The position numbers were made by a program, and so were the translations under genes. The notes under the pieces are model-generated. The model searched no databases, was not told where the DNA came from, and worked only from the letters and a program-made list of their open reading frames with translations. Below, one piece after another: positions 9,001 through 61,830 of a stretch of 64,000 nucleotides of DNA. The stretch spans positions 96,100,001 to 96,164,000 of the forward strand of contig NC_079165.1 of the NCBI RefSeq assembly GCF_947568905.1, written 5' to 3'. The DNA comes from Ostrea edulis. Its lineage: Eukaryota. How positions within the stretch are numbered: the first letter of the stretch is position 1; each line of letters opens with the position of its first letter.

Positions 9001-12000
9001 CATAGGGAAATAATTCTGCAGTTAATAAATATTATACAATTATTTCCTGCCTACTCGGGAAACAGTCAAAACTATTGCCTCAAAGAAGTAGATGACCTGT
9101 GAAACTGTTGTCAGAGGCTGTAGGCAACAGTTTCACGGGACTTTGCCACTACTGAGGGGCAATAATTTTGACTGTTTTCCTAGTAGGCATGAAACAATTG
9201 TTTTATTACCTAATCTGCTAATCAGGAAACAATTCGTCATGTGATTGGGTAATAGTAAGTCACGTGATCGGGTAATAGTAAGTCACGTGATGAACTGTTT
9301 CACCCCTGCTCATTGTGTGTACCTTTCTCTGCTGATTATAGTTGGAAACAGAAAAAAATATGTAATATGAATTTATATAGTAAATTAGGTAATACATATT
9401 ATTATTACAGTAACTTGATCTAAAGAGTTGCATCAAGTCGAGTTGACAGGCGCGGATCATCAGATCACACGAGACACGACAAAAAAAAACCTGTTGATGC
9501 ATTGTGACGTCATCAGTTTCAGAAGATACTGATACAGAATCAAATAAAGTCCACCGCCACGGCACATGATACGCCCGTCACATATTGTTAACAGTATAGA
9601 TTGGACCCATTAAAACATTTTTTTTTATATCAACTTAATTATATGTCACAGTGACCTTAAAGTAGGATGTGACACACCTTCTACCTAAGATGCATTAGTT
9701 GACCAATTTTGGTGATTCTAGGTCTAATAGTTTTCAAGTTATGAGCCAGACAAGTTTTTGCCATATATGGCCATATCTTCTTAATGAAAAGTCACAGTGA
9801 CCTGGTTTTAATGTGCGACACACCTTCTACCCAAGATGTATCTACAGACAAAGTTTGATGATTCTAGGCCTTGTAGTATTTAAGTTACGGGTCGGACACG
9901 AAAAAGCTAACAGACGGACGGATATCTTCTTAATGAAAAGTCACAGTGATCTGGTTTTAATGTGCGACACACCTTCTACCCAAGAAGTATCTACAGACAA
10001 AGTTTGATGATTCTAGGCCTTGTAGTATTTAAGTTACGGGTCGGACACGAAAAAGCTAACAGACGGACGGACATGAACGCCATACCATAATACGTCCCGT
10101 CTTAAGACGGGCGTATAAAAACCATAGTGTGGTGATCCGGAAAATCAAGAGTATCAAAAAACAAAACATTGACGGGTATATGACAATGACCTAATTTGCA
10201 CACAAGTATGCAAAACTTAGGTACAAGTATTGTCTTAAAATACAGTGGACTTTCTATAGGAGATTGGGTATTACAAGGCACTACACTTGTTACAAGGTTT
10301 TGTTGAGGTCCCGACTCTTCCCTTCACATTTCTTTCACAAATGTGATGATTACAATGAAATTGATCATTACTAAATTCTGCTCAAAATGATATGAAATCA
10401 ATTTCCTTGTAATGAATATTGATCACAAGTGCTCTTAGTACATGCAACGAAAGATTTTTTGCCTAGTATACCAAATCACTTGGTACACCCCAAGTGCAAG
10501 CTTCACGGTTCAGTAACCATGCCATTGTATTCATGATTATTAAACCAATAATCATCATTAATTGGTACTGATCAAAGACAGGAATGATGGAACTGCATTC
10601 TTCAGTACCAGTCCTGTGTAACATAGCCACCATGACAGTTGTGGTAATTAAAGCTGTGAAATCAGTGATGATTTGTTTTTTAATATACTTCAAGTCATAT
10701 TAGGTCATGACTTGAAAGAGGAATTATTGTATTATGATACTGAAGCTTTGATAATAGCAGAGTCTACAAAGGAGTAAACACACAAAATGTAAAATCACAG
10801 AGGGTTACAATTTACCTGAAAAGACGTTGGTACACATATAATGTTCAAATCTTCATTCTTTATTCTTTCAGCTGAAAAAGTTTTAGACCCAGATTAATGA
10901 TCACCTAAGTGCATATTTTTGGCCTTTAGAAATCATTGTGTTACCTGTGTGCTTTCATATTTTTCCATTTTAAACTTGTACTAGATGATATATGTATTGT
11001 TAGCCTATAACTATAATACATAATTTATAATAATTTACAATTCTATTATAGGGAGTTAAGTTTTATCACACCACAGTGAAAGAAGATTTTCTAACATACA
11101 TTTGTATCTTGCATTTTTATCACATGATCAACTAAGCCTGAGGGGTAGTAAATTTTACATTGCTCATTATAATCATTTAAACAACATGTCTGATTGATGT
11201 CCAGCAGCAAGAAAGATTTTCTTTTCCAATTTAATTTACATAATGTCTATGACCAATCTAGTACCTGGTACCTGAACCTTGGGGGTCATTAATTTCACAA
11301 ATTTGGTAGTGGGGTCAATGCCCATTATAATCAGGTAAACATTTTGTCTCTTTGATGTCCAGAAGTAAAGAAGATTTTCTAAGATGTAATGCATTTTCAA
11401 AATGCATATGTATATGACCAACTTAGCCCAAGCCTAGGTCCTGAACCCTTAACCCAGATGTCATGAATTTCACAGTTTTTGGTAAAGGACTCAGTGCCCA
11501 TTGTGATCTTGCAAACAGTTTGACTGCTTGATGTCCAGAAGTAAAGAAGATTTTTTAAGATTACTGTCATTAATTTTGATGGTTTTGGCCACATCCCTCA
11601 TGCCCCAGGGAGACAGAGACCATAAAAGTCACAATTTTAGTTCCCTTTGATGCATAGACTTTATTTACCCAATTTGGTTGAAATTGGTTAAGCCATTCCA
11701 GAGAAGAAAGAAGTGTTTTTTAAATTCAAAAGTTTACAACCGATTTAATTGTGACCAACAATGAAAGATGATGGACAAAAACAGATAGAAGTAGATCACC
11801 TGAGTGATTCAGGTGACCTAAAAAAAACTGTGGAAGACCCTGCAGGATGCAAGTTTATTTATTTTTTAAATCTCTCTTTCTTACCAAGTCTCTGAACAGC
11901 ATACACCACAGTTGATCCACTCCCAATGCCAACTTTTTGGTTATTCTGAAAGCACATGTATTGAGGAATAATCTCACTGGTACACTAACATGTACATGTA

Positions 12001-15000
12001 TTATTGAATTACAATTATAGACTTACTTACATATCCAATCTTATATTTGTATTGAGGAATAATCTCACTGGTACACTAACATGTACATGTATTATTGAAT
12101 TACAATTATAGACTTACTTACATATCCAATCTTATATTTGTATTGAGGAATAATCTCACTGGTACACTAACATATACATGTATTATTGAATTACAATTAT
12201 AGACTTACTTACATATCCAATCTTATATTTGTATTGAGGAATAATCTCACTGGTACACTAACATGTACATGTATTATTGAATTACAATTATAGACTTACT
12301 TACATATCCAATCTTATATTTGTATTGAGGAATAATCTCACTGGTACACTAACATGTACATGTATTATTGAATTACAATTATAGACTTACTTACATATCC
12401 AATCTTATATTTGTATTGAGGAATAATCTCACTGGTACACTAACATGTACATGTATTATTGAATTACAATTATAGACTTACTTACATATCCAATCTTATA
12501 TTTGTATTGAGGAATAATCTCACTGGTACACTAACATGTACATGTATTATTGAATTACAATTATAGACTTACTTACATATCCAATCTTATATTTGTATTG
12601 AGGAATAATCTCACTGGTACACTAACATGTACATGTATTATTGAATTACAATTATAGACTTACTTACATATCCAATCTTATATTTGTATTGAGGAATAAT
12701 CTCACTGGTACACTAACATGTACATGTATTATTGAATTACAATTATAGACTTACTTACATATCCAATCTTATATTTGTATTGAGGAATAATCTCACTGGT
12801 ACACTAACATGTACATGTATTATTGAATTACAATTATAGACTTACTTACATATCCAATCTTATATTTGTATTGAGGAATAATCTCACTGGTACACTAACA
12901 TGTACATGTATTATTGAATTACAATTATAGACTTACTTACATATCCAATCTTATATTTGTATTGAGGAATAATCTCACTGGTACACTAACATGTACATGT
13001 ATTATTGAATTACAATTATAGACTTACTTACATATCCAATCTTATATTTGTACTGAGGAATAATCTCACTGGTACACTAACATGTACATGTATTATTGAA
13101 TTACAATTATAGACTTACTTACATATCCAATCTTATATTTGTATAAGAGAATATAAGACAATATAAACACGCATATGTAAATGCCTATTCATCAAATGAT
13201 AAATTTGTGAGAAACTTTTTTTAAAAATGACTTTGTATCCTAGTAGGACAAATTGACTCCTAGATACATCTAGTATCTGTTCACATTAAGTGGGGTGAGG
13301 TGGTGGGGGTGGGTGGTGGTGGTGGTGGTAAGTCCCTTCCTTTTCTTGACAGAAAATAGTACATGTACGATGCCCACTGTCTAATCGTATACCTGTGCAA
13401 TCTGGCACATTGGGAATTCCGACCCAATTTTTCACTCCCCAAAATTAATGCAATCAAACACTATACAATCTGACCACTGTCTAATCCGAATTTCGGCACG
13501 ACTTCAAATAACTGCACATAACACAACCCCATGCAATTCCCATAGATATTGTATATAATAAACTATCACATGAGGAACTACAGCATACCTCACAACTAAA
13601 TCTGAGGAAACTCCACAGTTACATTAATGAATTCTTCTGAACATGTAGCAAGTAATCCTTGAAAATAAAAGTTCCAAAACAAAACATTTTTAGACAAACA
13701 CTTTTCAAGCACATAATGACCAATCACATGAGACTCTTTGCCAATTGGACCTGTATGGAGCACCAAATTAACATAAACTCAAATAATTGAAGATATCTTC
13801 AATTATTTGAAGATATCATCAATTCATTTGATGCCCACTACAATTGAATTAAAGGTCTCTTCAAATAATTAATGATACCTTCAATTCTGAATTACTGTGC
13901 GCGTTAATTGAATTGATGATAGCATTAATTCTTCAGCTGAATTGATGTGCACTTAAATTAAATTAATGATTTCTTCAAATGGATTAATGATATCAACAAT
14001 TGAATTGATGCGTGCTACAATTCAATTGAAAAGAGCAATAATTGATATAATGAGCGCATTAAATCAATTGATGAGAGCAATAATTGAATTGATGCGCACA
14101 TGAATTCATTTGATAAAAGCAATAATTGATTTAATGCACGCATTAATTCAATTATTGCTCTCTTCAATTGAATTAATGATATCTTTAATTCATTTGAAGA
14201 AAGCAACAATTCTTTCAGAGAGAGTAACTATATAATTAAAGATATCTTCAATTCAACATATCCACAATTGAATTAATGATCTCTTTAGTTGAATTGTTGC
14301 TCTCTTTAAAAGAATTGATGCGCACATTAATTCCTTATACAAAAGCATTGTAAATGATTTAAAGATATCTTCAGTTGAATTAAAGAGATCATCAAATCAT
14401 TTATACCGAGCTCTAAATTAATTATTGTGAGCAATATTTCTACTAAATTGATGCTCTCATCAAATGAATTGAAGAGAGCAATAATTGAATTTACGTACGC
14501 ATTAAATCTATCATTGCTCTCATTAATTGAATTAATGCGCACATCAATTGAATTAATGAGAGCAATAATTGATTTAATGCGTGCATTAATTCAATAAAAG
14601 AGAGGAATAAGTGAATTGAAGATATCTTCAATTATTTGAGTTTATGTTAATTTGGCGCTCCATAGACCTGAAGACAATGGTCCCGCATTGCGACGTTTTA
14701 GAGATAATATCAAAACCAGCAAACAGAATAACTTCGTACTTCTCGTTAACAATCTTTATGTCCAAATTGAGTCACACAATAAAAAACCCAAATAATAATA
14801 AGTATAAATTCTTAGATTTACCGCTTTTGAGTAGGCGACATTTCAAGCTTAAGAATTTATACTTATAAAATAAATCATTAGGTTTTTTTTATTGTGTCAA
14901 TAAATTTGGACATAAAAATTGTTTCCAAGTATGAAGTTATTCTGTTCGACGGTTTTAATATTAACATAAATCATCGCAATCAGGGACCACCGAGAGTCGG

Positions 15001-51611: not shown

Positions 51612-54600
51612 CTAACTTTTGATTTTGAGAATGATTCCTGCCAGCGCCAGCAGACCGAAGCTCCAGGCAGTGTTGACTAGGTACCCCCTCCAGACTGGCA
51701 TGTCTACCAGTGTCCAACCTGGTCAAACAGGATATTCAAAATATAAACATTGCTCTATGTAATATTGTATACAAGCAGTTTTGGCCCATTTTTTCTGCTA
51801 ATTTCCTCCTTATCCTAAATGGGTATATTCAAAACTGAGCTAATATACATTCATTTATTACTTTAAATTATCAAGAACCAATTTTGGGCTAGTTTAAACC
51901 TGATTTTAAATCATTTTCCAATCTGAATGTATGGGAAAATATACCACATGGCAAAAACAACCCTGCATCCAGCACTCTGATGTGTAATTTTTGAGCCTGT
52001 TTAAAATCTGTCCAACATGAGTGTTAAAACCAGCTATACATGTTCTTGGAAATTGCTTTTATTGCAAATTAATCTGAAACCCTCCCCTGATTTTCCCAGC
52101 AATTTTCTACAAAGCGTAAAATCTTAATATTCCTTTTCAAAATGACATGATACTAGAAGGCATTCAGAGAAATAAACTTCCTTAAATTTATACTTTGTAT
52201 TTTTAAATGGGAGTTCACTGGTTTTTACTGTCTTCTCACAATATTTGCGATGAGGATATACATGTACTAGCACACTGGTAGTATCTCGCCTATATGCATG
52301 CTTTTGTTGGTATCATCAAAATTTTTAAGCCATATTTCTAATCCAATTTCCAGGAGTATTGTCTTGTATAAGAATCTAAGTTCTTATTGATTTTATTGAT
52401 TTTTGCGATAAAATATAAAAGGTCAAGGGCACTGAAAGTTTCACAGCATTTTATGGATGCTACCTATTCAATACAAATATCATAAACTGAGAACAGACTT
52501 AAGTCAAAATAAAGATTTTGTATATACCCATGGCTTGATCAATTTGAAAATCTGACTCCATTATATTATAAGATTCTGGTCCAGGATCCTGGATTCCTAT
52601 TGATTTTAATAGGTCAACAGGCATATTCCAATTCACTGTGTACAAGATTTCAGCTGTATTTTGTATCCAAAATCAACAACTCTTGAAGGGTTGTTACCTT
52701 ACACAAAGATCTTGGGCTTTTACTGAATTTTAAGGATAAAAAACATGATAGGTGAAGGCCCAAAGAGAGGAAATTCTGAGAGCTCCCATTGCAAGGTGAC
52801 ATCTTACTTTGTGAAGCCCTTGATACATATTCTCTAACTGAATATAAATTCGTAAAAAATTTCAAATGGCGTGATCAGTAATGGGGAGTGCTGGATCTGA
52901 TATAAATGTTTTCTTTCAGAAAATTCAAAATAAAGAAGAATGTTCATTACCTCTACTAAGAATACACCTCATTGCTTCTGCTGCATAGGTTTGAGGCAGA
53001 CATATACTGATGTACCGCAACCATTCTGGAATAGCCTCGATGGGCCATATTATACCTACAGAGTACAGACACATATTGAAAATTATTCCCAAAAATATCA
53101 ACTATACATTTATATTCAAAAGTACACGTAGAAAGGAAGTTTGAGAAATCACCTCAAATTTCAACATCATTGTTCATATCTCTACAATTTTTTTTGAGGA
53201 TGTGATGAGTATCATTCACCCTAGTCAAATAATGTTGTATGTGTGTTGGATGATTTACTTTTTCACTGAACACTCACCACATAGAAGTAACATTGGATAC
53301 ACAGAACACTCACCACTTAGTAGTAATACTGGATACACAGAACACTCACCACTTAGAACACTGGATACACAGAACACTCACCACATAGAAGTAACATTGG
53401 ATACACAGAACACTCACCACATAGAAGTAACATTGGATACACAGAACACTTACCACTTAGTAGTAATACTGGATACACAGAACACTCACCACTTAGAACA
53501 CTGGATACACAGAACACTCACCACATAGAAGTAACATTGGATACACAGAACACTCACCACATAGAAGTAACATTGGATACACAGAACACTTACCACTTAG
53601 TAGTAACATTGGATACACAGAACACTTACCACTTAGTAGTAACATTGGATACACAGAACACTTACCACTTAGTAGTAACATTGGATACACAGAACACTTA
53701 CCACTTAGTAGTAACATTGGATACACAGAACACTTACCACTTAGTAGTAACATTGGATACACAGAACACTCACCACTTAGTAGTAACATTGGATACACAG
53801 AACCAAGGGCTAGTTGTATAGCAGAGGACTCGTTCTCACAAACAGCTGAAAATATCACACCTGCAAACACAACTTATCATTTCTTAATGAAGCATACCTT
53901 TAATGATATTTCACAGATTCTACATATAAAAATCATCAGACTCATATGTGTATAGGGTCTATCTCAAATTCATATTTCTTTTGCTTTTTTCTTCTGGGTT
54001 GGGTGAAGTGTTTGTTGATTAATTAATATCTCATTTTTTTCATTTTCATTAAACACTGCATAGTCATCAAAGCACTGACCTAGGGTCATTCCACAGAATC
54101 CTTGCCCCATGACCAGTAAAATGACCCATATCAGGGGGCCTTTGTATGGAACCTGCAAGTGAAAAAAAGGTGCATATCATAGAAATGATGGAAAGGGTGA
54201 ATATCTCCTATGTAAAAAATCCCACATGTAAACAAAGACATGCCAAAAATAGAAAAGACATGACTGAGTAACAGTCTGTTAAAACTACAATGCTCAGTGT
54301 GCTCATGTTCTGTCTGTTTGGGTCGTAATGAAAGAAATAGTAAAAACTGCCCTTCTTTGAAATCCACAAGAAAGGAAATTCATGAATGAACATTTCATAC
54401 CCGAAAAACTAGCACAGAGATTACATACCTTATTTCATACTAGGCTCCGTAAAGCAATAAAAATAGTTAACATGGGAAACTAACCTCGAAAACTGCTAAA
54501 GCAAACACCATCACTAGAGCAACTTGGACTGTCAGCACAAACAGCTGTGTAAAGACGTGGGCCAAGAGGATTTCGAAGGCAGACATTCCAGCTGTCAAAC

Positions 54601-57600
54601 TCCGATCTAACAGTCCCTCCTTCTTTTCTATCACAAAAGCCAGCGTTGTCAGACCAGTGGCCATAAAAAAAGTAATGCTACAAGAAAATCACTTACACAT
54701 TGTCAATTTTTTAGAAGTTTTTTTCACTGCCGGTATGTTAAGGCAGGTGATACCACATTTCTGCATGTAAATTGTGCAGTCTTTACAACCTGTACTAAAC
54801 AAAGGAAGGGAGCTATTAAACTTCTAAAACTATTTTGAGAGCTTACATTAAAACATTTAGTGTCTTAACAAGGTGACAAAGATGTGCTTTAGTAAGACAT
54901 CATCACATGGTTGTTATTTAATAGATAATGAATGTACCTTAAAAAATGAAAAAATATAACACTAACCTTGCTTTAAACATCAATTTGATTGGCATTATTT
55001 TAAAAAGGTAAAACACCCAAAGTTTACAAAAGTGCTGCTAAAATAATGTACTTATTTCAATCATGATATGTCACATTGTTTTGCAGATTTTTTCCAAGCC
55101 AAGTTTTTCATGACCTGTCTTAATGTACCCTTGACAGTTTTCAATTAACTTCTTAAATCTAAGAAATAAATATCAAGGATATTTGAATTATGAAAGCATG
55201 AGATAATTCATATAATCCACAGAGGCATAAATGCAATGCATGAAAGTTCTCAATAATACGGGACTTTTGAGATACGGATCCATTCTGACTTTTATCGCGT
55301 GTTGAACGTAATTTGTAGGGCATGTCACTTCCGAATCACAATACCAACTAGGCAAACAAACATAGAATACTTCAATTGCTCTCAAATTCCCGCATTGAAA
55401 TGCTATCTTTGAAAGAAAGGAATCACTATAACCATTTTATAGGAAAATGCATTTGATTAAACTATCCAAGTTGACGAGGGAAATAAATTTAGGGAATATT
55501 TTGAGGACATCGGTAAGACTTAACGCCTTGCATCCAATGATACGCATCTAAATGCATCTTTTCCCACCCATCTAATTTACACTCAGGTACTTAGCACCAA
55601 TAGTGACTTGGGTCGTCATCGTAGAACAACACATAGCTCTTTACGGACCATCTGCTAGCGAAACACCATTTGTATCTATGTCAACTCTGCCCTACAATTG
55701 GTTATAATCACGTGACTGCGGTGTATAAACGTCAAGCCTAAACAGTCGTTCCGGCACATCCCGAAAGTTCCATATTGTTAATGTTTGCTAAACATATCAA
55801 CATATCCAGAGTACTTACAAAAGAATTGCACGCTTTGTACCTGAGTATTATTCCAGGTGCTATAAAGTTCCTGAAGTTGGGGTCTTTGCTACCATAGATA
55901 GGATCATTCATCTGTAAAGGAAATAAGGATTTGTTCAATCAGATGAGTACTAAACGATGTCCACTTACTTACACTTGTATAACAATATATCTCTCAAAAT
56001 AAGAACTGTTAGTTGCACTCTGAATTATGTGACCCCTGACTACATATATAATATTGTACAATATTATTATTATCTTTTAATTTCTGAAATTGTATATATA
56101 TGAATTATATGAACTAAAAGCCTTTCTAATCCAGGGGGCCCCTGGCACCCCAGGTGAGGAATACTTAGGGGATATCTTCGGATATTTTACCCCAAAACTA
56201 GAATTATGTACTTACTTAATAAAATCAATGTCAACTATGGAAAAAAAAAAAAAGTTGCACTCAGCAGTAAGACTACCAATCATTTTTCACTGACCTTTAT
56301 GGGAAGCTGTCCTAAATTTGGATTAAGCTGAAAAGTTTGCAGTAATATCTCAGAAAATGCTTGGAATGAAGAGGCAATGGACTCCTGTAACTGTAATGTA
56401 ATCTGTTGGTCTGCAAGAGAAAGGTTTTCATGCCAGTATAATTCAGTTTTCACTGAATTTTATCCCAGTACTTGACAAACATTTTTTTGTACCTTTTTTT
56501 GGTTGCTGGTAATTATTGTTGAATTTATGTATTCAATAGAAGACATCTAGTGAATTACTAAGTCGTATTCTTGATTCCGTGAATATTTCACACTTACTTG
56601 TTGTGTCTAAATATAGTTGTATACAGCTCCCTTCAATAGTACGGTTGTCAACCCCTGATACGTTGGTAAATCTGTAATGTAACTCATGCAAATAATATTT
56701 TAAAAATTGTAATGATTTTGCCTTTGATATTTTTTAAAACTGTTATGACAGCCATTTCCTCATGAACACGCTGCAGTTGTAAACAATGGTATGAATACAG
56801 ACCTACTTGATAAATATAGTACATTTCTTTTAACGACTGGGAATTCTGACAGAAAAGAGAGTAGCTTCAGGAAGTATGCCAGCTTAAAACATGGCAGTTC
56901 ATACACTCGTGTATTTTCAATTTAAAAAAAAACAAAAGACAAACATAACACATTTCATAGTCTTGTTATCTACTACTTACCTTGTGAGGAGGTCCTGAGT
57001 GAAATTCCTCCCTATTCCAATGACTCCCCATGTATCCCCAAGTCTCACGGAATCTAGCGCTACATTCATGTCTTTATATATTACCTACCAAAAACAGAAT
57101 GGCTTAACATAACAGTATGACCCTATTCACCATTAGGAGTTATTAAATGCAGAATGAAACTAAATATCTATTTGTACATTATTGTTTTGTACACTGTATC
57201 ATATACTGTAATAGATGTACAATATTCTTAATCTGATAAAGCCAGCCCCCTTTTTCCTATCGACATGTTCTGATGGGCATCGTCTGGAGGTCATCCTGAC
57301 GACGATAGGAGAAGGGGGGCTGGCTTTACTCAGACTGCAATATTCTTATCAAATTGTGCAGTAACATTGTTTTCCTCAATATTTTAGTTGCACATTAAAC
57401 ACATAATCCAACAAAGCAAGCATGTCTGTGCAGTGCAGGGCCCAACTGAAATAAAACTATTTTCTCACTAGAAATGTGATGGAATTTGTAAATCACTGAC
57501 AGCTTATGGCTCGGATGTCGGATCTAATGGAAATACCCAGGCTTATGGCTTGGATGTCGGATCTAATGGAAATACCCAGGCTTATGGCCTGGATGTCGGA

Positions 57601-60600
57601 TCTAATGGAAATACCCAGGCTTACGGCTCGGATGTCGGATCTAATGGAAATATCAAGGCTTATGGCTCGGATGTCGAATCTAATAGAAATACCCACACGG
57701 GGGATTCTGGAATTATTTTGCCATGGCTATCTTTTGAGATGAATAACCAGTACAACTGAGTAACATCACCTATACATGTTCATTACCTTACTAATCGTTT
57801 CATTATCCAGTTCCCTGATAAATAGCTGTCCCAATCCCTCTGTTTCGTTGTTGACGATGGCCATTTTTAATCCGTATGGTGAGCTCCCAATACACAGACA
57901 AAACAGGATGATCTGTATTGATGGCAAAATAAACTGAAACAAAAGAAAACTGAAATGGAAAAGTAAAAGCTTTCCATAAATTCTTTCCATTAAGTATGCA
58001 AATATTTTATAGCATTTTGCTAATGAATGTGTAAAACTGACTGTTGAGATGCATGATCAGAGATTTGGGTTCAACAGGACTGTTTCCTTGAATAGTGCAA
58101 CTCCCAACAAGAGAACAGACATTAAAATACTCCACAGTGTAATTGGTCTGCTATTTTTTTTTTTTTTTTTTTTACAAAGTTTGTAGGATATCTCCAATAG
58201 CAACCCCCCTCCAGTAAACTACTAGTATAGTTATCACTGTTATTGATAATATTGAGGTGTTGTTGAATTAAGTGGGGGGGGGGGGGGGGGGGGGGGGACT
58301 AGATATAACTTGCACAAACTTAATTAAAGGTCATAATACCAGTAAGATGATGTACACAATCTTTTCTTTTAATGGTTTATATTGTGCAAGTGATAAAGTT
58401 TGTCTGAAGCATAAATGAATCTTACCCAATGTTTCTTTTCATAAATATGATATTCTTCAGAAATTGAGCAAAAATATTTCTGGGAGATGGTAATCCAATT
58501 GGGCAGAGGTAGTTCCCAGGGACTTCTATTTGTGCATCTAAAACATTTCACAATATATCATATCACTCTGATTCTGTTCACAAGCATCTAAGACACTTTA
58601 CATCAAACTGGTTTTACTCACAGTAGTATTAAAATGTTTGGAACCAAACCAGATTTATTTTATTTCTTGCTGTGAATCTAAAAATTCATATGGCAATACT
58701 TTCATACTGGTCTGAATTTCAATGAAACACTTTGATTATCCTAAATATGGGCTTTGGAGTATCTGAGCATCAAACAAAGAGATAAAAGTCACATACAGTG
58801 GATGGATTGTTACTTAAATTGGCCTAAAAATTCTTAAATTTACATATTTCTATGTTCTCCACGAATCATAATTTGTTTTGTGGCTGGACAATTTGAAGAA
58901 ATTTAAAACAAAAATATACCAGGAAAATTTTGATTCATTCATTTCACACACTTCCTCAGTCTGAATGGGAAAATTGAAAACTGGAGAAATTTTAATCTTG
59001 CCTATCAATTCAAAGCAGCAGTAAATGATTTTGGGCCAATCCAAAATACAGATGGAATTGTTTTTCAATGTGTCCGGGCAAAAATTACATTGGAGAAACA
59101 TTTCTCAGCACAAAGTATTCTAAGGTCTATGGATTGTCACTAAGGTCATCTTAAACAGTCTGTTTATCTTGGATATATATTTTGAATAACAGTATTGAGT
59201 AACCACAATCTATTCATGCAATCTAATTATTCTACATCTGAACTTTATATAAACATTCTGATTAATGACAAAGTTTTTACGTGAAACTGATGACACCTGC
59301 ATTAAAAAGAGAGAGAGAAAACGACATGATGTGTTCATGTAGAATAATCATAAATTTTCCTCATTTTAAATACATTCATATGTATTCTCTAAATAATACA
59401 TTTCTATGTCATGTACATAATGTTAAATAAACATGCAAAATATAGTAATTATTACCCAATAATTATAATATACCGGGTACACCCAATAATTTCTACATGT
59501 AGATCATTTTCATAAAGTTTAAATACAGATCATTTTTGAGAGTTCAATACCTCATATCTAAGTCCAGACATTTTATGTAAGTTACTTACTAGTTACAAGA
59601 AAAGTAATGCATGCCTTGGTTTAACAATTTCCTTGATATAACATTAAAACTGAAATGTATCTCAGTACAGATACTACACAGGAGTGACTATGAAGCAGCA
59701 ACTGACATCCATAACCCTGGGTAGTAAACCTTTTAATAAAATAATTGCTGTCCTCCAAATTTCTCAAGGATTGTCTTGTAGGCATATACTGTAAACCAAC
59801 TTTTATTCGCGTGCGAGAAAATTTTGCGAGATTAGCAAGAACCTCATAGTCGCAAATATTTCTCATCATGAACCAGTCCTTGAATGTCTTTCATAGGTTC
59901 GAATAAGGCTTGATCGCGAAAATTCCTTGCCGTGAACTAGTTTACCACAGATGAATCACAAAATAAAGTAGCCATGAATAAAAGATGGCTTACAGTATCC
60001 CGGTAACCAAATGTCCATAGTTCCTACTCGTGATACTGCCACACAGTAATAATAATAATGTCCTTTACTTACAAGACAGTTTGATGTAATGATGTAGCAG
60101 TTTAAATAAAGTGAGGGCATGTAAGTACAAAGCCTTGAAATATTTTTCCTAAGTGAAAATACCAAAATTCTGCATGTCGTGCAGCAGTAATGGAGTCGTC
60201 TCCCCTGCTGGCTCATGTTCAGAGTTCACCATCTTCATACTAGGTTTGCTTGGCTGGTGACTCTGAAAAAATGAAAATCCATAGTGTTTTCAGATATGAA
60301 CACCATAATACAGTATGCATATTAACAATCTTGCACGGCAAAACACACCTTACTGTGTATTAAAGGGGCATTATATGTAATTTTGTCACCAAAGATTTAA
60401 TTCAATGGAAATTGTTCTATATTACATATTTCAGTAATAACACCAGTATCTAATTATTTCAAACACTTTTTAACCTCAAAACATGCAGGCACATCAATAT
60501 GTGTAATTTCGGTGATTAAATAATCATTGTTTTGCAAGACAATAATTCTTTTTACATATTTCTTTACACTAAAAGTGGTTATCTAACATAGTTTTATTAG

Positions 60601-61830
60601 GTTTTTCTTGTTTTCGTACATAATAAATGTTTGTTAGTCATTATTATATTATATTCCTATGCCATTGAGAGATTTTGAGAGAAAAAATGGTTGCCATCAC
60701 TTCCACAGCTAATGCTCCTTTAAGATCTTAATCTAGGATGGGGAATTCAGAAAGTCATACATGTTGTAAAACTGAAAAGTTTTGTATCTAATCATTAATC
60801 AACATGAATAGCACATGGCATATATTCTTTTATATTGTTCCTGAGGATTTTTTTTTATTAACATGTATTTTAACAGTACTCTTGATTTTTGGCCATTATA
60901 TGTATTGATTGTATATATACAGTCTAGAATATCCTTATTCATATATTCTTATGGGGATCCGGGTTAGACTAGGTCCTCAGTACCCCTTGCTTGTTATAAG
61001 AGGTGACTAGATGGGGTGGTCCTTCAGAGGAGACCGCAAAAACCGAGGTCCCATGTCACAGCAGGTGTGGCACGATAGAGATCCCATAGGCCATATGTGT
61101 TGAGCATTATAGGCCTAAATTTTGCAGCCCTTGACCGGCAATGATGACATCACTGTATAAGTGAAAGATTCTGAAGAGGGACATTAAATAATATACAACC
61201 AACCAAACTTATGTATTTTTACCAAATTTCAGTACAGTGACAAGAGTTATCTGCCCTTTATAACAGTTGATATAGTAAATTTCATGGGATATTATGACAT
61301 TACATAATTCAAGTTTCATAATATTTTGTTTTTTAAAATAATCTGTCTTATATTTAAACAACATACCAGTATGTACTTCTAAGTTAACCAAAACATGTAC
61401 CACCTGTACATAAATATTTCCCGGTGTCATTTTGTGACAAGAGTAAGCAACAGAATGTATTTGTTTATCATCTGTCTCCCTGTGATGGCCAATTCTATTG
61501 TTTCTATTTGACTCGATCACCATCACTGAGTACATGTAGTTTGGAGTTTTGGGTCTATTTACTGTTAGATATGTTGTGCGTTACAGTGAATTAGATTACT
61601 TTAATGGAGAAAGACAAATATAATTCAACTATTGGTGGCAGTTACCAGGAGGGAACGGGAAGAGGGCAAAGAAAATATGAACAGCTACTCAACAAATATA
61701 TATATTGGTACATCAAAAAGGTATTTTACTGCTAAGGGTGCAATATGTGCTGTCATACCTCTCCTGCAAGATTCATGTTCAGAGTGTTTTGATCTGCATG
61801 ACATAGTTTCAGGAATATTGTTTCCAAACA
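51612..61830 (-). CDS. ABC half-transporter, ABCH-like (ABC-2-type membrane domain at the C-terminus); 5'-partial, 13 exons, 458 aa in window
   Basis: Exons in transcription order: 61830-61759 (CLETIFLKLC), 60262-60163, 58537-58426 (PSPRNIFAQFLKNIIFMKRNIG), 57949-57787 (FLLFQFILPSIQIILFCLCIG), 57084-56981, 56671-56598 (LYLDTT), 56410-56295 (NQQI), 55911-55841 (PIYGSKDPNFRNFIAPGIIL), 54677-54485 (EKKEGLLDRSLTAG...LAH), 54152-54080, 53860-53774 (LGSVYPMLLLSG), 53055-52951 (IIWPIEAIPEWLRYIS.CLPQT.A.EAMR.IL.RG), 51718-51612 (stop). All introns are GT-AG and phases are continuous (1377 nt). No Walker A/B exons were found, so the ATPase domain lies beyond 64000. Confidence 0.9.
53268..53803 (-). 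repeat. 36-bp minisatellite duplicating the last 30 nt of an ABCH exon plus its 5' splice site (15 donor copies)
   Basis: Sense unit GTTCTGTGTATCCAATGTTACTACTAAGTG|GT(A/G)AGT. The first copy is the real exon end (53774). Two internal units are 32 bp. Confidence 0.93.
57232..57334. repeat. About 100-nt hairpin (mini inverted-repeat element)
   Basis: Left arm tctgataaagccagccccctttttcctatcg pairs with right arm cgataggagaaggggggctggctttactcaga. Confidence 0.75.
57502..57696. repeat. 39-bp minisatellite, 5 copies
   Basis: Unit gcttatggctcggatgtcggatctaatggaaatacccag; it explains three overlapping repetitive ORFs. Confidence 0.92.
59787..59997. mobile_element. TA-flanked MITE (TACTGTAAACC...GGCTTACAGTA), Tc1/mariner-type
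   Basis: Short TIRs with TA at both ends, plus subterminal inverted 'ttttattcgcg' / 'catgaataaaa'. Confidence 0.7.
60952..61207 (+). mobile_element. SINE fragment (3' part), copy 2
   Basis: Homologous to 25030-25270; ends in an (aacc)n tail. Confidence 0.6.

What the first reader, a model, noticed from the sequence alone, without database searches (positions are those of the whole stretch)
53268..53860. Exon end plus 5' splice site amplified 15 times: an in-frame ladder of alternative donors in the ABC transporter membrane domain
Seen: the 36-bp unit is the last 30 coding nt of the exon (GSVYPMLLLS-G) plus the 6-nt donor. Exon ends could fall at 53774 (native, G|GTGAGT); 53738, 53702, 53666, 53630, 53594 (all G|GTAAGT, a closer match to the consensus donor than the native site); and 53558, 53522 (G|GTGAGT). 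These 8 are spaced exactly 36 nt apart with no stop, so each step adds 12 residues (G[E/K]CSVYPMLLLS) just before the conserved GIIWP motif. A 32-bp unit then introduces a TAA (53493-53495), so the 7 more distal donors (53490 to 53278) would give premature-stop transcripts. Inference: array length could tune the ratio of normal, helix-extended and NMD-bound isoforms, and copy-number alleles would act as a splicing rheostat on a transporter.
Basis: partly seen in the sequence, partly recalled or inferred. Interest (0 to 1): 0.78.

Follow-up and report, generated by a model that had tools for sequence, protein, structure and literature searches.

The report
Splice-junction minisatellite in oyster ABCH gene
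In a flat-oyster lipid-transporter gene, the last 30 bases of one exon plus its splice signal have been copied 15 times in a row into the intron; the repeat is real, but it belongs to a known kind ("mirage" minisatellites, as in human F7) in which the extra splice signals are normally silent decoys.

Summary
On the minus strand, TRF finds a 36-bp array of 15.2 copies at 53803-53264. Its first unit is the last 30 nt of exon 53860-53774 plus the donor. There are 15 GGT[AG]AGT donors at exactly the stated positions. Eight are in frame, and a TAA at 53495-53493 makes the other seven premature-stop sites.

The gene is Ostrea edulis "ABC transporter G family member 20-like", an ABCH-type half transporter. 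Its annotated protein joins the native donor 53774 to acceptor 53055. All 35 aligned orthologs keep that junction without an insert.

Independent O. edulis read assemblies also break at the array, and one differs in a unit, so the array is real and variable.

Relatives argue against a conserved in-frame ladder. Saccostrea echinata has a 43-bp array and a Crassostrea gigas-group oyster has a 53-bp unit at the same junction. Both are out of frame and built differently. C. virginica, S. cucullata and Pinctada have none.

Similar arrays sit at other junctions of this gene in other bivalves. The scan found the same kind in other O. edulis genes.

This is a new member of a known kind. The splicing rheostat is untested and unlikely.

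The parts
51612..61830 (-). Part of the Ostrea edulis ABCH-type gene ('ABC transporter G family member 20-like', XP_056011638.1) that lies in the window. It covers residues 237-694 (linker plus membrane domain). The nucleotide-binding domain lies beyond 64000.
   Evidence: tblastn of P0164 on the window gave exon HSPs at 97-100% identity where they do not run past the exon; Pfam ABC2_membrane and ABC2_membrane_3 on single exons; source name.
54080..54152 (-). Upstream exon (VPYKGPLIWVILLVMGQGFCGMTL, then the first base of a split codon).
   Evidence: Sequence read; matches P0164.
53774..53860 (-). The 87-nt exon whose 3' end seeds the array. It encodes (G)VIFSAVCENESSAIQLALGSVYPMLLLS plus the first base of Gly625.
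   Evidence: The residues are identical in the S. echinata and S. cucullata proteins although exon DNA identity is only 84-85%.
53264..53803 (-). The 36-bp minisatellite: 15.2 copies with a 140-bp higher-order period. The first unit spans the exon-intron boundary.
   Evidence: TRF; unit listing.
53768..53773 (-). Authentic donor GTGAGT (exon ends at 53774). This is the one used in the annotated protein.
53594..53773 (-). Five 36-bp units whose 30 exon-derived bases match the exon end exactly and which are identical to one another except at intron +3 (GTGAGT in the first unit, GTAAGT in the next four). Each ends in a G|GTAAGT donor (53738, 53702, 53666, 53630, 53594). This is the young, homogenised part of the array.
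53522..53593 (-). Two in-frame variant units (...LLLC) with G|GTGAGT donors at 53558 and 53522.
53490..53521 (-). 32-bp unit (4-bp deletion) that carries an in-frame TAA at 53495-53493.
53278..53489 (-). Distal units with six more donors (53454 to 53278). All lie behind the stop. This is the older, more diverged part, including a second 32-bp unit.
   Evidence: Independent contigs L020 and L021 start inside this part.
53056..53263 (-). Unique remainder of the intron. It starts GTGAGTGTTCAGTG at 53277, and its GTTC matches the GTTC at the start of the unit in the exon (53803-53800).
   Evidence: The microhomology is read directly from the sequence.
52951..53055 (-). Downstream exon encoding (G)IIWPIEAIPEWLRYISICLPQTYAAEAMRCILSR(G), with the invariant G-x-x-W-P turn.
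51612..51718 (-). Last coding exon (WTLVDMPVWRGYLVNTAWSFGLLALAGIILKIKS) and the TAG stop.

Best explanation
This is a lineage-specific 'mirage' minisatellite, a tandem array whose first unit spans an exon-intron boundary.

Proposed history (inferred):
- Slippage or unequal exchange between two GTTC microhomologies duplicated a 36-bp segment. One GTTC is in the exon at 53803-53800 and the other is at intron +7 to +10. The segment is the last 30 exon nt plus GTGAGT.
- The array then grew by unequal exchange. There is an older distal part organised as 140-bp higher-order units. There is also a young proximal block of five units whose exon-derived bases are still identical to the exon end.

Proposed function (inferred):
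- The functional mRNA is made from the authentic, most upstream donor (53774) joined to acceptor 53055.
- The 14 downstream copies are mostly silent decoys.
- Occasional use of donors 2-8 would duplicate 12 residues per step inside the TM5 helix, just before the invariant G-x-x-W-P turn, and would most likely inactivate the protein.
- Use of donors 9-15 would give stop-containing, NMD-prone RNA.

The array is a tolerated by-product of a very repeat-prone bivalve genome, not a tuned regulator. The anatomy, gene identity, species comparison and reality of the array are shown. Donor usage and the birth mechanism are inferred.
For: Anatomy.

Gene identity and native junction in the annotated protein.

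Junction conservation: uninterrupted in 35 orthologs from molluscs to insects and echinoderms, with G625, W628 and P629 invariant.

Coding constraint: the exon's residues are identical between O. edulis and Saccostrea at 84-85% DNA identity, so the gene is under purifying selection and must be spliced correctly.

No protein with the repeated motif was found.

Same junction in relatives:
- S. echinata has a 43-bp array of 7.7 copies at 79% identity. There is a stop right after the native donor, downstream sites are out of frame, and several donors have mutated.
- In the C. gigas group, contigs from five samples break at the exon end, and one shows a 53-bp unit restarting.
- C. virginica, S. cucullata and Pinctada have no array.

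Boundary-spanning arrays at other junctions of the orthologous gene.

Independent O. edulis contigs: L020 and L021 are 99.6-99.7% identical, start inside the last units, and L021 shows one unit variant.

Literature: in F7 IVS7 only the most upstream of identical donors is used (PMC1557585). Amphioxus mirages do not disturb normal splicing (PMC3087553).
Against: - No O. edulis RNA-seq or cDNA could be examined, so donor usage is inferred from annotation, orthologs and precedent.
- All 15 donors pair with U1 equally well, and better than three other donors of the gene (-11 against -6.7 to -8.3 kcal/mol).
- In human 6-16 (IFI6) and CBS, two proximal pseudo-sites are used alongside the authentic one (PMC1557585).
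- The F7 scanning rule was shown in mammalian cells, not molluscs.
- Three oyster lineages carry arrays at this one junction. That is more than the roughly 5-10% per-junction rate seen would predict, so a local cause or selection is not excluded.
Confidence: 0.75

Rival explanations
1. The in-frame donors are genuinely used as alternatives. They give a ladder of TM5-extended ABCH isoforms plus NMD targets, and array copy number tunes the output of functional transporter.
For: Eight donors are in frame with no stop. All 15 are strong U1 matches. In human 6-16 (IFI6) and CBS, two proximal pseudo-sites are used alongside the authentic donor (PMC1557585). The array varies between individuals.
Against: No annotated or assembled protein carries the insert. 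The insert would duplicate half a transmembrane helix next to invariant residues. Arrays at the same junction in relatives are out of frame and decaying. Two oysters and Pinctada do without any array. The F7 experiments show dominance of the first site.
Confidence: 0.07
2. Splicing noise without function. Donors 2-3 are used in a noticeable minority of transcripts simply because they are strong and close. This gives non-functional isoforms and a mild cost.
For: The pseudo-sites have the same 30-nt upstream context and the same U1 pairing as the native site. The 6-16 and CBS precedents apply.
Against: The F7 result shows that identical or stronger downstream sites stay silent. The NCBI annotation gives one protein for two transcripts. 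All C. gigas transcript-derived proteins seen that span this junction use the first site, although that species has at least one duplicated donor.
Confidence: 0.13
3. A selected array of U1-binding sites. Repeated donors just downstream of a small exon are kept because they help exon definition or protect the transcript. This would explain why three oyster lineages evolved arrays at this same junction.
For: Arrays recur at one junction with three different unit structures: 30+6, about 16+27, and 36+17 nt. The donors are unusually strong compared with neighbouring donors.
Against: C. virginica, S. cucullata and Pinctada splice the same conserved exon without any array. S. echinata copies are losing their GT donors. 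Similar arrays occur on acceptor sides and at other junctions, which fits a mutational bias better.
Confidence: 0.04
4. Assembly artefact. The array or its length was created by mis-assembly.
For: Tandem repeats are error-prone in assemblies. Copy number could not be checked against raw long reads.
Against: The array is only 540 bp long and has an ordered internal variant structure. Contigs from two independent O. edulis samples start inside its distal units and continue into the same flank at 99.6-99.7% identity.
Confidence: 0.02

Closest known systems
Human F7 intron 7 VNTR (37-bp minisatellite; Borensztajn et al. 2006, PMC1557585)
   Same: The first monomer spans the exon-intron boundary, so the authentic donor is followed by several identical or near-identical pseudo-donors. 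The unit length is similar (37 against 36 bp). The array is polymorphic.
   Different: The F7 unit is 4 exon nt plus 33 intron nt, with 5-9 copies. Here it is 30 exon nt plus 6 intron nt, with 15 copies, and the unit is a multiple of three, so eight sites are in frame. Usage of the first site only is shown experimentally for F7 and is only inferred here.
'Mirage' minisatellites of amphioxus (Adh3 and globin genes; PMC3087553)
   Same: Tandem duplications of exon-intron boundaries in an invertebrate with a highly polymorphic, repeat-rich genome. They are length-unstable, show concerted evolution inside the array with diverged edge units, and normal splicing is retained.
   Different: The phylum differs (mollusc). 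The unit is shorter than in the globin cases (150-160 bp). As far as my searches went, the kind has not been described for bivalves.
Human interferon-inducible 6-16 (IFI6) and CBS intron 13 minisatellites (as summarised in PMC1557585)
   Same: Boundary-spanning arrays that provide many reiterated donors.
   Different: Multiple-site usage is documented there by transcript analysis and is undocumented here. I did not verify their unit lengths and frames, because the primary papers are not held in the library.
ABCH half transporters (Tribolium TcABCH-9C; PDB 8yzp, 8z01, 9ju6; PMC12578276)
   Same: The host gene is a clear homolog (E = 8e-196). It has the same NBD-TMD order and the same Pfam domains.
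   Different: It is a mollusc ortholog of unknown substrate. Only residues 237-694 lie in the window.

Membership tests
Boundary-spanning ('mirage') minisatellite | Head-to-tail tandem array of a short unit (tens of bp) | tested here: met
   TRF gives period 36, 15.2 copies, 92% matches, score 863.
Boundary-spanning ('mirage') minisatellite | The first unit contains the authentic exon-intron junction, so the splice site is reiterated in the intron | tested here: met
   The unit is exon 53803-53774 plus GTGAGT, giving 15 GGT[AG]AGT sites.
Boundary-spanning ('mirage') minisatellite | The authentic site is still the one used for the normal mRNA | tested here: inconclusive
   The annotated protein P0164 and all orthologs use the native junction. 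No O. edulis transcript reads were available.
Boundary-spanning ('mirage') minisatellite | Length or sequence instability between individuals | tested here: inconclusive
   L021, from another O. edulis sample, has GTAAGT where the window has GTGAGT at 53314. This is either a SNP or one 140-bp block fewer. Copy number was not measurable from short-read contigs.
Boundary-spanning ('mirage') minisatellite | Lineage-specific, not conserved in the orthologous intron | tested here: met
   S. echinata has a 43-bp unit and the C. gigas group a 53-bp unit. C. virginica, S. cucullata and Pinctada have none.
Functional in-frame alternative-donor ladder (6-16/IFI6 type) | Unit length is a multiple of three with an open frame | tested here: met
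   36 nt; open through eight donors, then TAA.
Functional in-frame alternative-donor ladder (6-16/IFI6 type) | Transcripts or proteins that use more than one donor | tested here: not met
   No protein with the repeated motif in the word search. One protein for two RefSeq accessions.
Functional in-frame alternative-donor ladder (6-16/IFI6 type) | Frame and donors preserved where relatives have the array | tested here: not met
   Units of 43 and 53 bp are out of frame. S. echinata has a stop right after the native donor, and several of its donors are mutated.
ABCH subfamily ABC half transporter | N-terminal ABC ATPase domain followed by an ABC-2-type membrane domain (PF00005 plus PF12698/PF01061) | tested here: met
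   Precomputed Pfam for P0164; single-exon Pfam hits; the AF2 model shows the NBD followed by membrane-domain helices.
ABCH subfamily ABC half transporter | Closest solved homolog is an ABCH transporter | tested here: met
   8yzp, 8z01 and 9ju6 at E = 8e-196 over both domains. The next best hits are ABCA3, ABCA7 and ABCA1, on the NBD only.

The most novel reading that the evidence does not exclude
The junction after the ...GSVYPMLLLS exon of oyster ABCH is a true hot spot. Arrays of reiterated donors arose there independently in Ostrea, Saccostrea and Crassostrea. In O. edulis the in-frame version is actually used, so individuals with different copy numbers make different mixtures of normal, TM5-extended and NMD-destined transcripts. 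This would be a heritable, fast-mutating dosage dial on a lipid or xenobiotic exporter.
Probability: 0.06. Interest if true: 0.7.

Novelty: new member of a known kind. Interest (0 to 1): 0.3.

Why it matters
As it stands, this is a clean, well-dated mollusc example of a phenomenon known from human F7, 6-16, CBS, LMNB2 and PDGFA and from amphioxus 'mirages'. Together with the two other notes from this scan, it shows that such arrays are common in oyster genes.

Its practical value is threefold.
- It warns gene predictors, because 15 equally good donors follow one another.
- It is a natural test bed, in a non-mammal, of the rule that the most upstream of several identical 5' splice sites wins. 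The proximal units copy the exon end exactly and all 15 donors pair with U1 equally well.
- It is a likely length-polymorphic marker inside a transporter gene.

If the ladder were used, it would be a rare case of copy-number-tuned isoform output. Nothing found here points that way.

Tried and rejected
- **Genome-wide repeat or TE fragment.** The whole-genome DNA search found only this locus. The weak hits L002 and L003 are unrelated 15- and 16-bp minisatellites that share a TTCTGTG core. Rejected.
- **Paralogs in the same genome.** None were found with two exon queries. The first look is loose, so this is weak evidence.
- **Proteins carrying the repeated 12-residue motif.** A word search with the 126-aa read-through frame found none.
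- **Ancient array shared by Saccostrea and Ostrea.** The apparent relic copy in S. cucullata is no better than shuffles (162 of 2000 reach the score). The similarity is just the orthologous first 27 nt of the intron. The unit boundaries differ in the three lineages. Rejected in favour of independent births.
- **GTAAGT copies stronger than the native GTGAGT.** True by letter match only. The U1 duplex energies are equal.
- **Turri et al. 1995 on 6-16.** The paper is not held. I cite it only through PMC1557585.
- **Argopecten locus and the O. edulis record.** Neither was retrievable.
- **Joined exon models.** Exons were searched one by one by reference, and the database protein P0164 served for the alignment and the fold. 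The extended isoform was therefore not modelled.

Full report
**What is there**

The gene lies on the minus strand. Exon 53860-53774 (87 nt) ends ...AGTG|GTGAGT. The motif GGT[AG]AGT then recurs 15 times: 53774, 53738, 53702, 53666, 53630, 53594, 53558, 53522, 53490, 53454, 53418, 53382, 53350, 53314 and 53278. The spacings are 36 x7, 32, 36 x3, 32, 36 x2.

TRF reports one array at 53264-53803, with period 36, 15.2 copies, 92% matches and score 863. There is a second-order period of 140 bp, which is 36+36+32+36. The unit is exactly the last 30 nt of the exon (53803-53774) plus the six-base donor.

In the five units after the exon, the 30 exon-derived bases match the exon end exactly. These units differ from one another only at intron +3, where the first has GTGAGT and the next four have GTAAGT. 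The distal units are diverged and include two units with a 4-bp deletion.

Reading on from the exon frame gives GECSVYPMLLLS, then GKCSVYPMLLLS five times, then two units ending LLLC. A stop follows at TAA 53495-53493. The only slips are the LLLC units and the strength argument. RNAduplex against the U1 5' end gives -11.0 or -11.1 kcal/mol for all 15 sites. Three other donors of the gene give -6.7 to -8.3.

**Whose gene it is**

Single exons hit Pfam ABC2_membrane and ABC2_membrane_3. One exon (window:54485-54676:-) was searched against 1.84 billion representatives. This led to bivalve full-length proteins.

P0164 is 'ABC transporter G family member 20-like [Ostrea edulis]' (XP_056011638.1 and XP_056011639.1, 694 aa). 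It matches the window exons at 97-100% where the HSPs do not run past the exon, covering residues 237-694. The window is therefore flat-oyster DNA, not human. The nucleotide-binding domain lies beyond 64000.

The closest solved structures are the ABCH transporter entries 8yzp, 8z01 and 9ju6, at E = 8e-196. These are the insect lipid and insecticide 'squeeze pump' (PMC12578276).

I built no joined exon model. Exons were searched one at a time by reference, and the database protein P0164 was used for alignment and folding.

**Which donor makes the protein**

The annotated O. edulis protein reads ...ALGSVYPMLLLSGIIWPIEAIP..., which is donor 53774 joined to acceptor 53055.

In an alignment of 35 orthologs (molluscs, a nemertean, a hemichordate, an echinoderm, crustaceans and insects) the junction is never interrupted. 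P619, G625 (the codon split by this intron), W628 and P629 are invariant.

An AlphaFold model has mean pLDDT 77.6. It places SVYPMLLLS in a short helix (617-623) at the end of the TM5 region. This sits directly before the G-x-x-W-P turn and the short helices that follow. One 36-nt step would duplicate 12 mostly hydrophobic residues there.

The exon's residues are identical between O. edulis and the two Saccostrea species, although DNA identity is only 84-85%. The gene is therefore under purifying selection and must be spliced correctly most of the time.

A word search with the 126-aa read-through frame found no protein carrying the repeated motif.

**Is the array real?**

It is unique in the 895-Mb genome. 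Two contigs from other O. edulis samples (L020 and L021) are 99.6-99.7% identical to the window. They begin inside the last one or two units and run into the same flank. That is what short-read assembly does at a tandem repeat.

L021 has GTAAGT where the window has GTGAGT at 53314. This is either a SNP or one 140-bp block fewer. An assembly artefact is therefore very unlikely, and some variation exists.

**The orthologous intron in relatives**

| Species (locus) | State at this junction |
|---|---|
| Saccostrea echinata (L018) | Own array starting in the same exon end: period 43, 7.7 copies at 79% identity, plus 2.6 more copies further on |
| Saccostrea cucullata (L017) | No array |
| Crassostrea virginica (L016) | No array; a (GA)n run instead |
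| Pinctada imbricata (L019) | No array |
| C. gigas group (L009-L013) | Contigs from five read sets all stop within 0-33 nt of the exon end; L011 runs through the donor plus 17 intron nt and then restarts 36 nt upstream in the exon, a 53-bp unit |

- In S. echinata a TAG follows the native donor at once. Downstream sites fall in all three frames, and several have lost GT.
- An apparent relic copy in S. cucullata is not significant. The similarity is just the orthologous first 27 nt of the intron.
- The C. gigas-group assignment rests on one exon being 100% identical to C. gigas XP_011436092.1.
- All C. gigas transcript-derived proteins listed that span this junction use the first donor.

The three arrays are built differently: 30+6, about 16+27, and 36+17 exon+intron nt. 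They therefore arose independently. Only the O. edulis unit happens to be a multiple of three.

**How common is the kind?**

In the same orthologous gene I found further boundary-spanning arrays:
- C. virginica has eight 55-bp copies of the last exon's acceptor plus its first 13 nt (L016 17623-18064).
- Pinctada has a donor-side array (L019 4866-5088).
- Pinctada also has a 24-bp x 50 array with duplicated exon pieces (L019 1966-3187).
- S. echinata has a 23-bp array touching an acceptor (L018 7761-7882).

Two earlier notes of this scan report the same kind in other O. edulis genes.

The literature already knows the class.
- Human F7 IVS7 has a 37-bp VNTR whose first unit spans the junction. 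Only the most upstream donor is used, even when downstream copies are made stronger, up to a consensus value of 91.
- In human 6-16 and CBS, two proximal pseudo-sites are used as well.
- In LMNB2 and PDGFA only the authentic site is used (PMC1557585).
- Amphioxus 'mirages' are length-unstable and do not disturb splicing (PMC3087553).

I found no description for bivalves.

**Most likely mechanism**

A first 36-bp duplication probably arose by slippage between the GTTC at 53803-53800 and the GTTC at intron +7 to +10. This is read from the sequence, and the event itself is inferred. Unequal exchange then built the 140-bp higher-order units, and recently the near-identical proximal block.

The first donor makes the mRNA. 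The other donors are decoys whose rare use would give inactive or NMD-bound products. I put this at 0.75. Noticeable but functionless use of donors 2-3 gets 0.13.

**What remains open**

Donor usage in O. edulis was not observed. The recurrence of arrays at this one junction in three oyster lineages also exceeds the rough per-junction rate (about 5-10%). This points to a local mutational predisposition or, less likely, to selection.

**Verdict**

This is a new member of a known kind, with modest interest.

Noticed in passing
L018 20897-21222 and 21329-21439 (Saccostrea echinata, orthologous intron): An independent 43-bp array starts in the same exon end. It has 7.7 plus 2.6 copies at 79% identity. 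Downstream sites are out of frame and several donors have decayed.
   Followed up: yes
L009-L013 (C. gigas-group read assemblies); L011 1554-1581: Contigs from five samples all end at the orthologous exon end. One shows the exon sequence restarting after 17 intron nt, which implies a 53-bp junction repeat. The full structure is unknown.
   Followed up: partly
L016 17623-18064 (Crassostrea virginica): An acceptor-side junction array. Eight 55-bp copies of the polypyrimidine tract, CACTAG and the first 13 nt of the last coding exon lie directly upstream of that exon.
   Followed up: partly
L019 1966-3187, 4866-5088 and 6034-6576 (Pinctada imbricata): Several arrays overlap exon boundaries of the same gene. 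One is a 24-bp x 50 array with repeated exon pieces, and another is a donor-side repeat of about 33 exon nt plus GTAAATTAATCA.
   Followed up: partly
Proteins P0224 (C. virginica isoform X1, 714 aa) and P0211/P0218 (C. gigas isoform X2, 573 aa): Annotated alternative isoforms in relatives arise at other junctions. One reads through after the ...SRG exon, and the other is truncated after the ...ALAVFEV exon. Neither arises at the repeated junction.
   Followed up: no
Proteins P0175, P0182, P0186 and P0013-P0171: Clear ABCH orthologs exist in bivalves, a gastropod, a nemertean, a hemichordate and a sea urchin. A 2025 commentary (PMC12578276) calls ABCH arthropod-specific.
   Followed up: no
L002 1414-1749 and L003 878-2174 (other chromosomes of this genome): Unrelated minisatellites with 15- and 16-bp units share the core TTCTGTG with the 36-bp unit. 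This may be a slippage-prone motif in this genome.
   Followed up: no
window 11957-13144: A 91-bp unit repeated 13.1 times at 99% identity.
   Followed up: no
window 13983-14617 and 43687-44361: Two blocks of degenerate 42-bp repeats (66-77% matches) lie about 30 kb apart. Their consensus units look like reverse complements of one another, which may mark the ends of a large element.
   Followed up: no
window 57502-57695: A 39-bp x 5 array lies inside the intron that follows the ABCH exon ending near 57783. It does not copy the exon boundary.
   Followed up: no
window about 8691-8539, 3933-3682 and 2232-2026 (minus strand): Open frames here read like exons of a ribose-5-phosphate isomerase A gene (for example ...DGADE...KGGG...). 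This rests on recall only.
   Followed up: no
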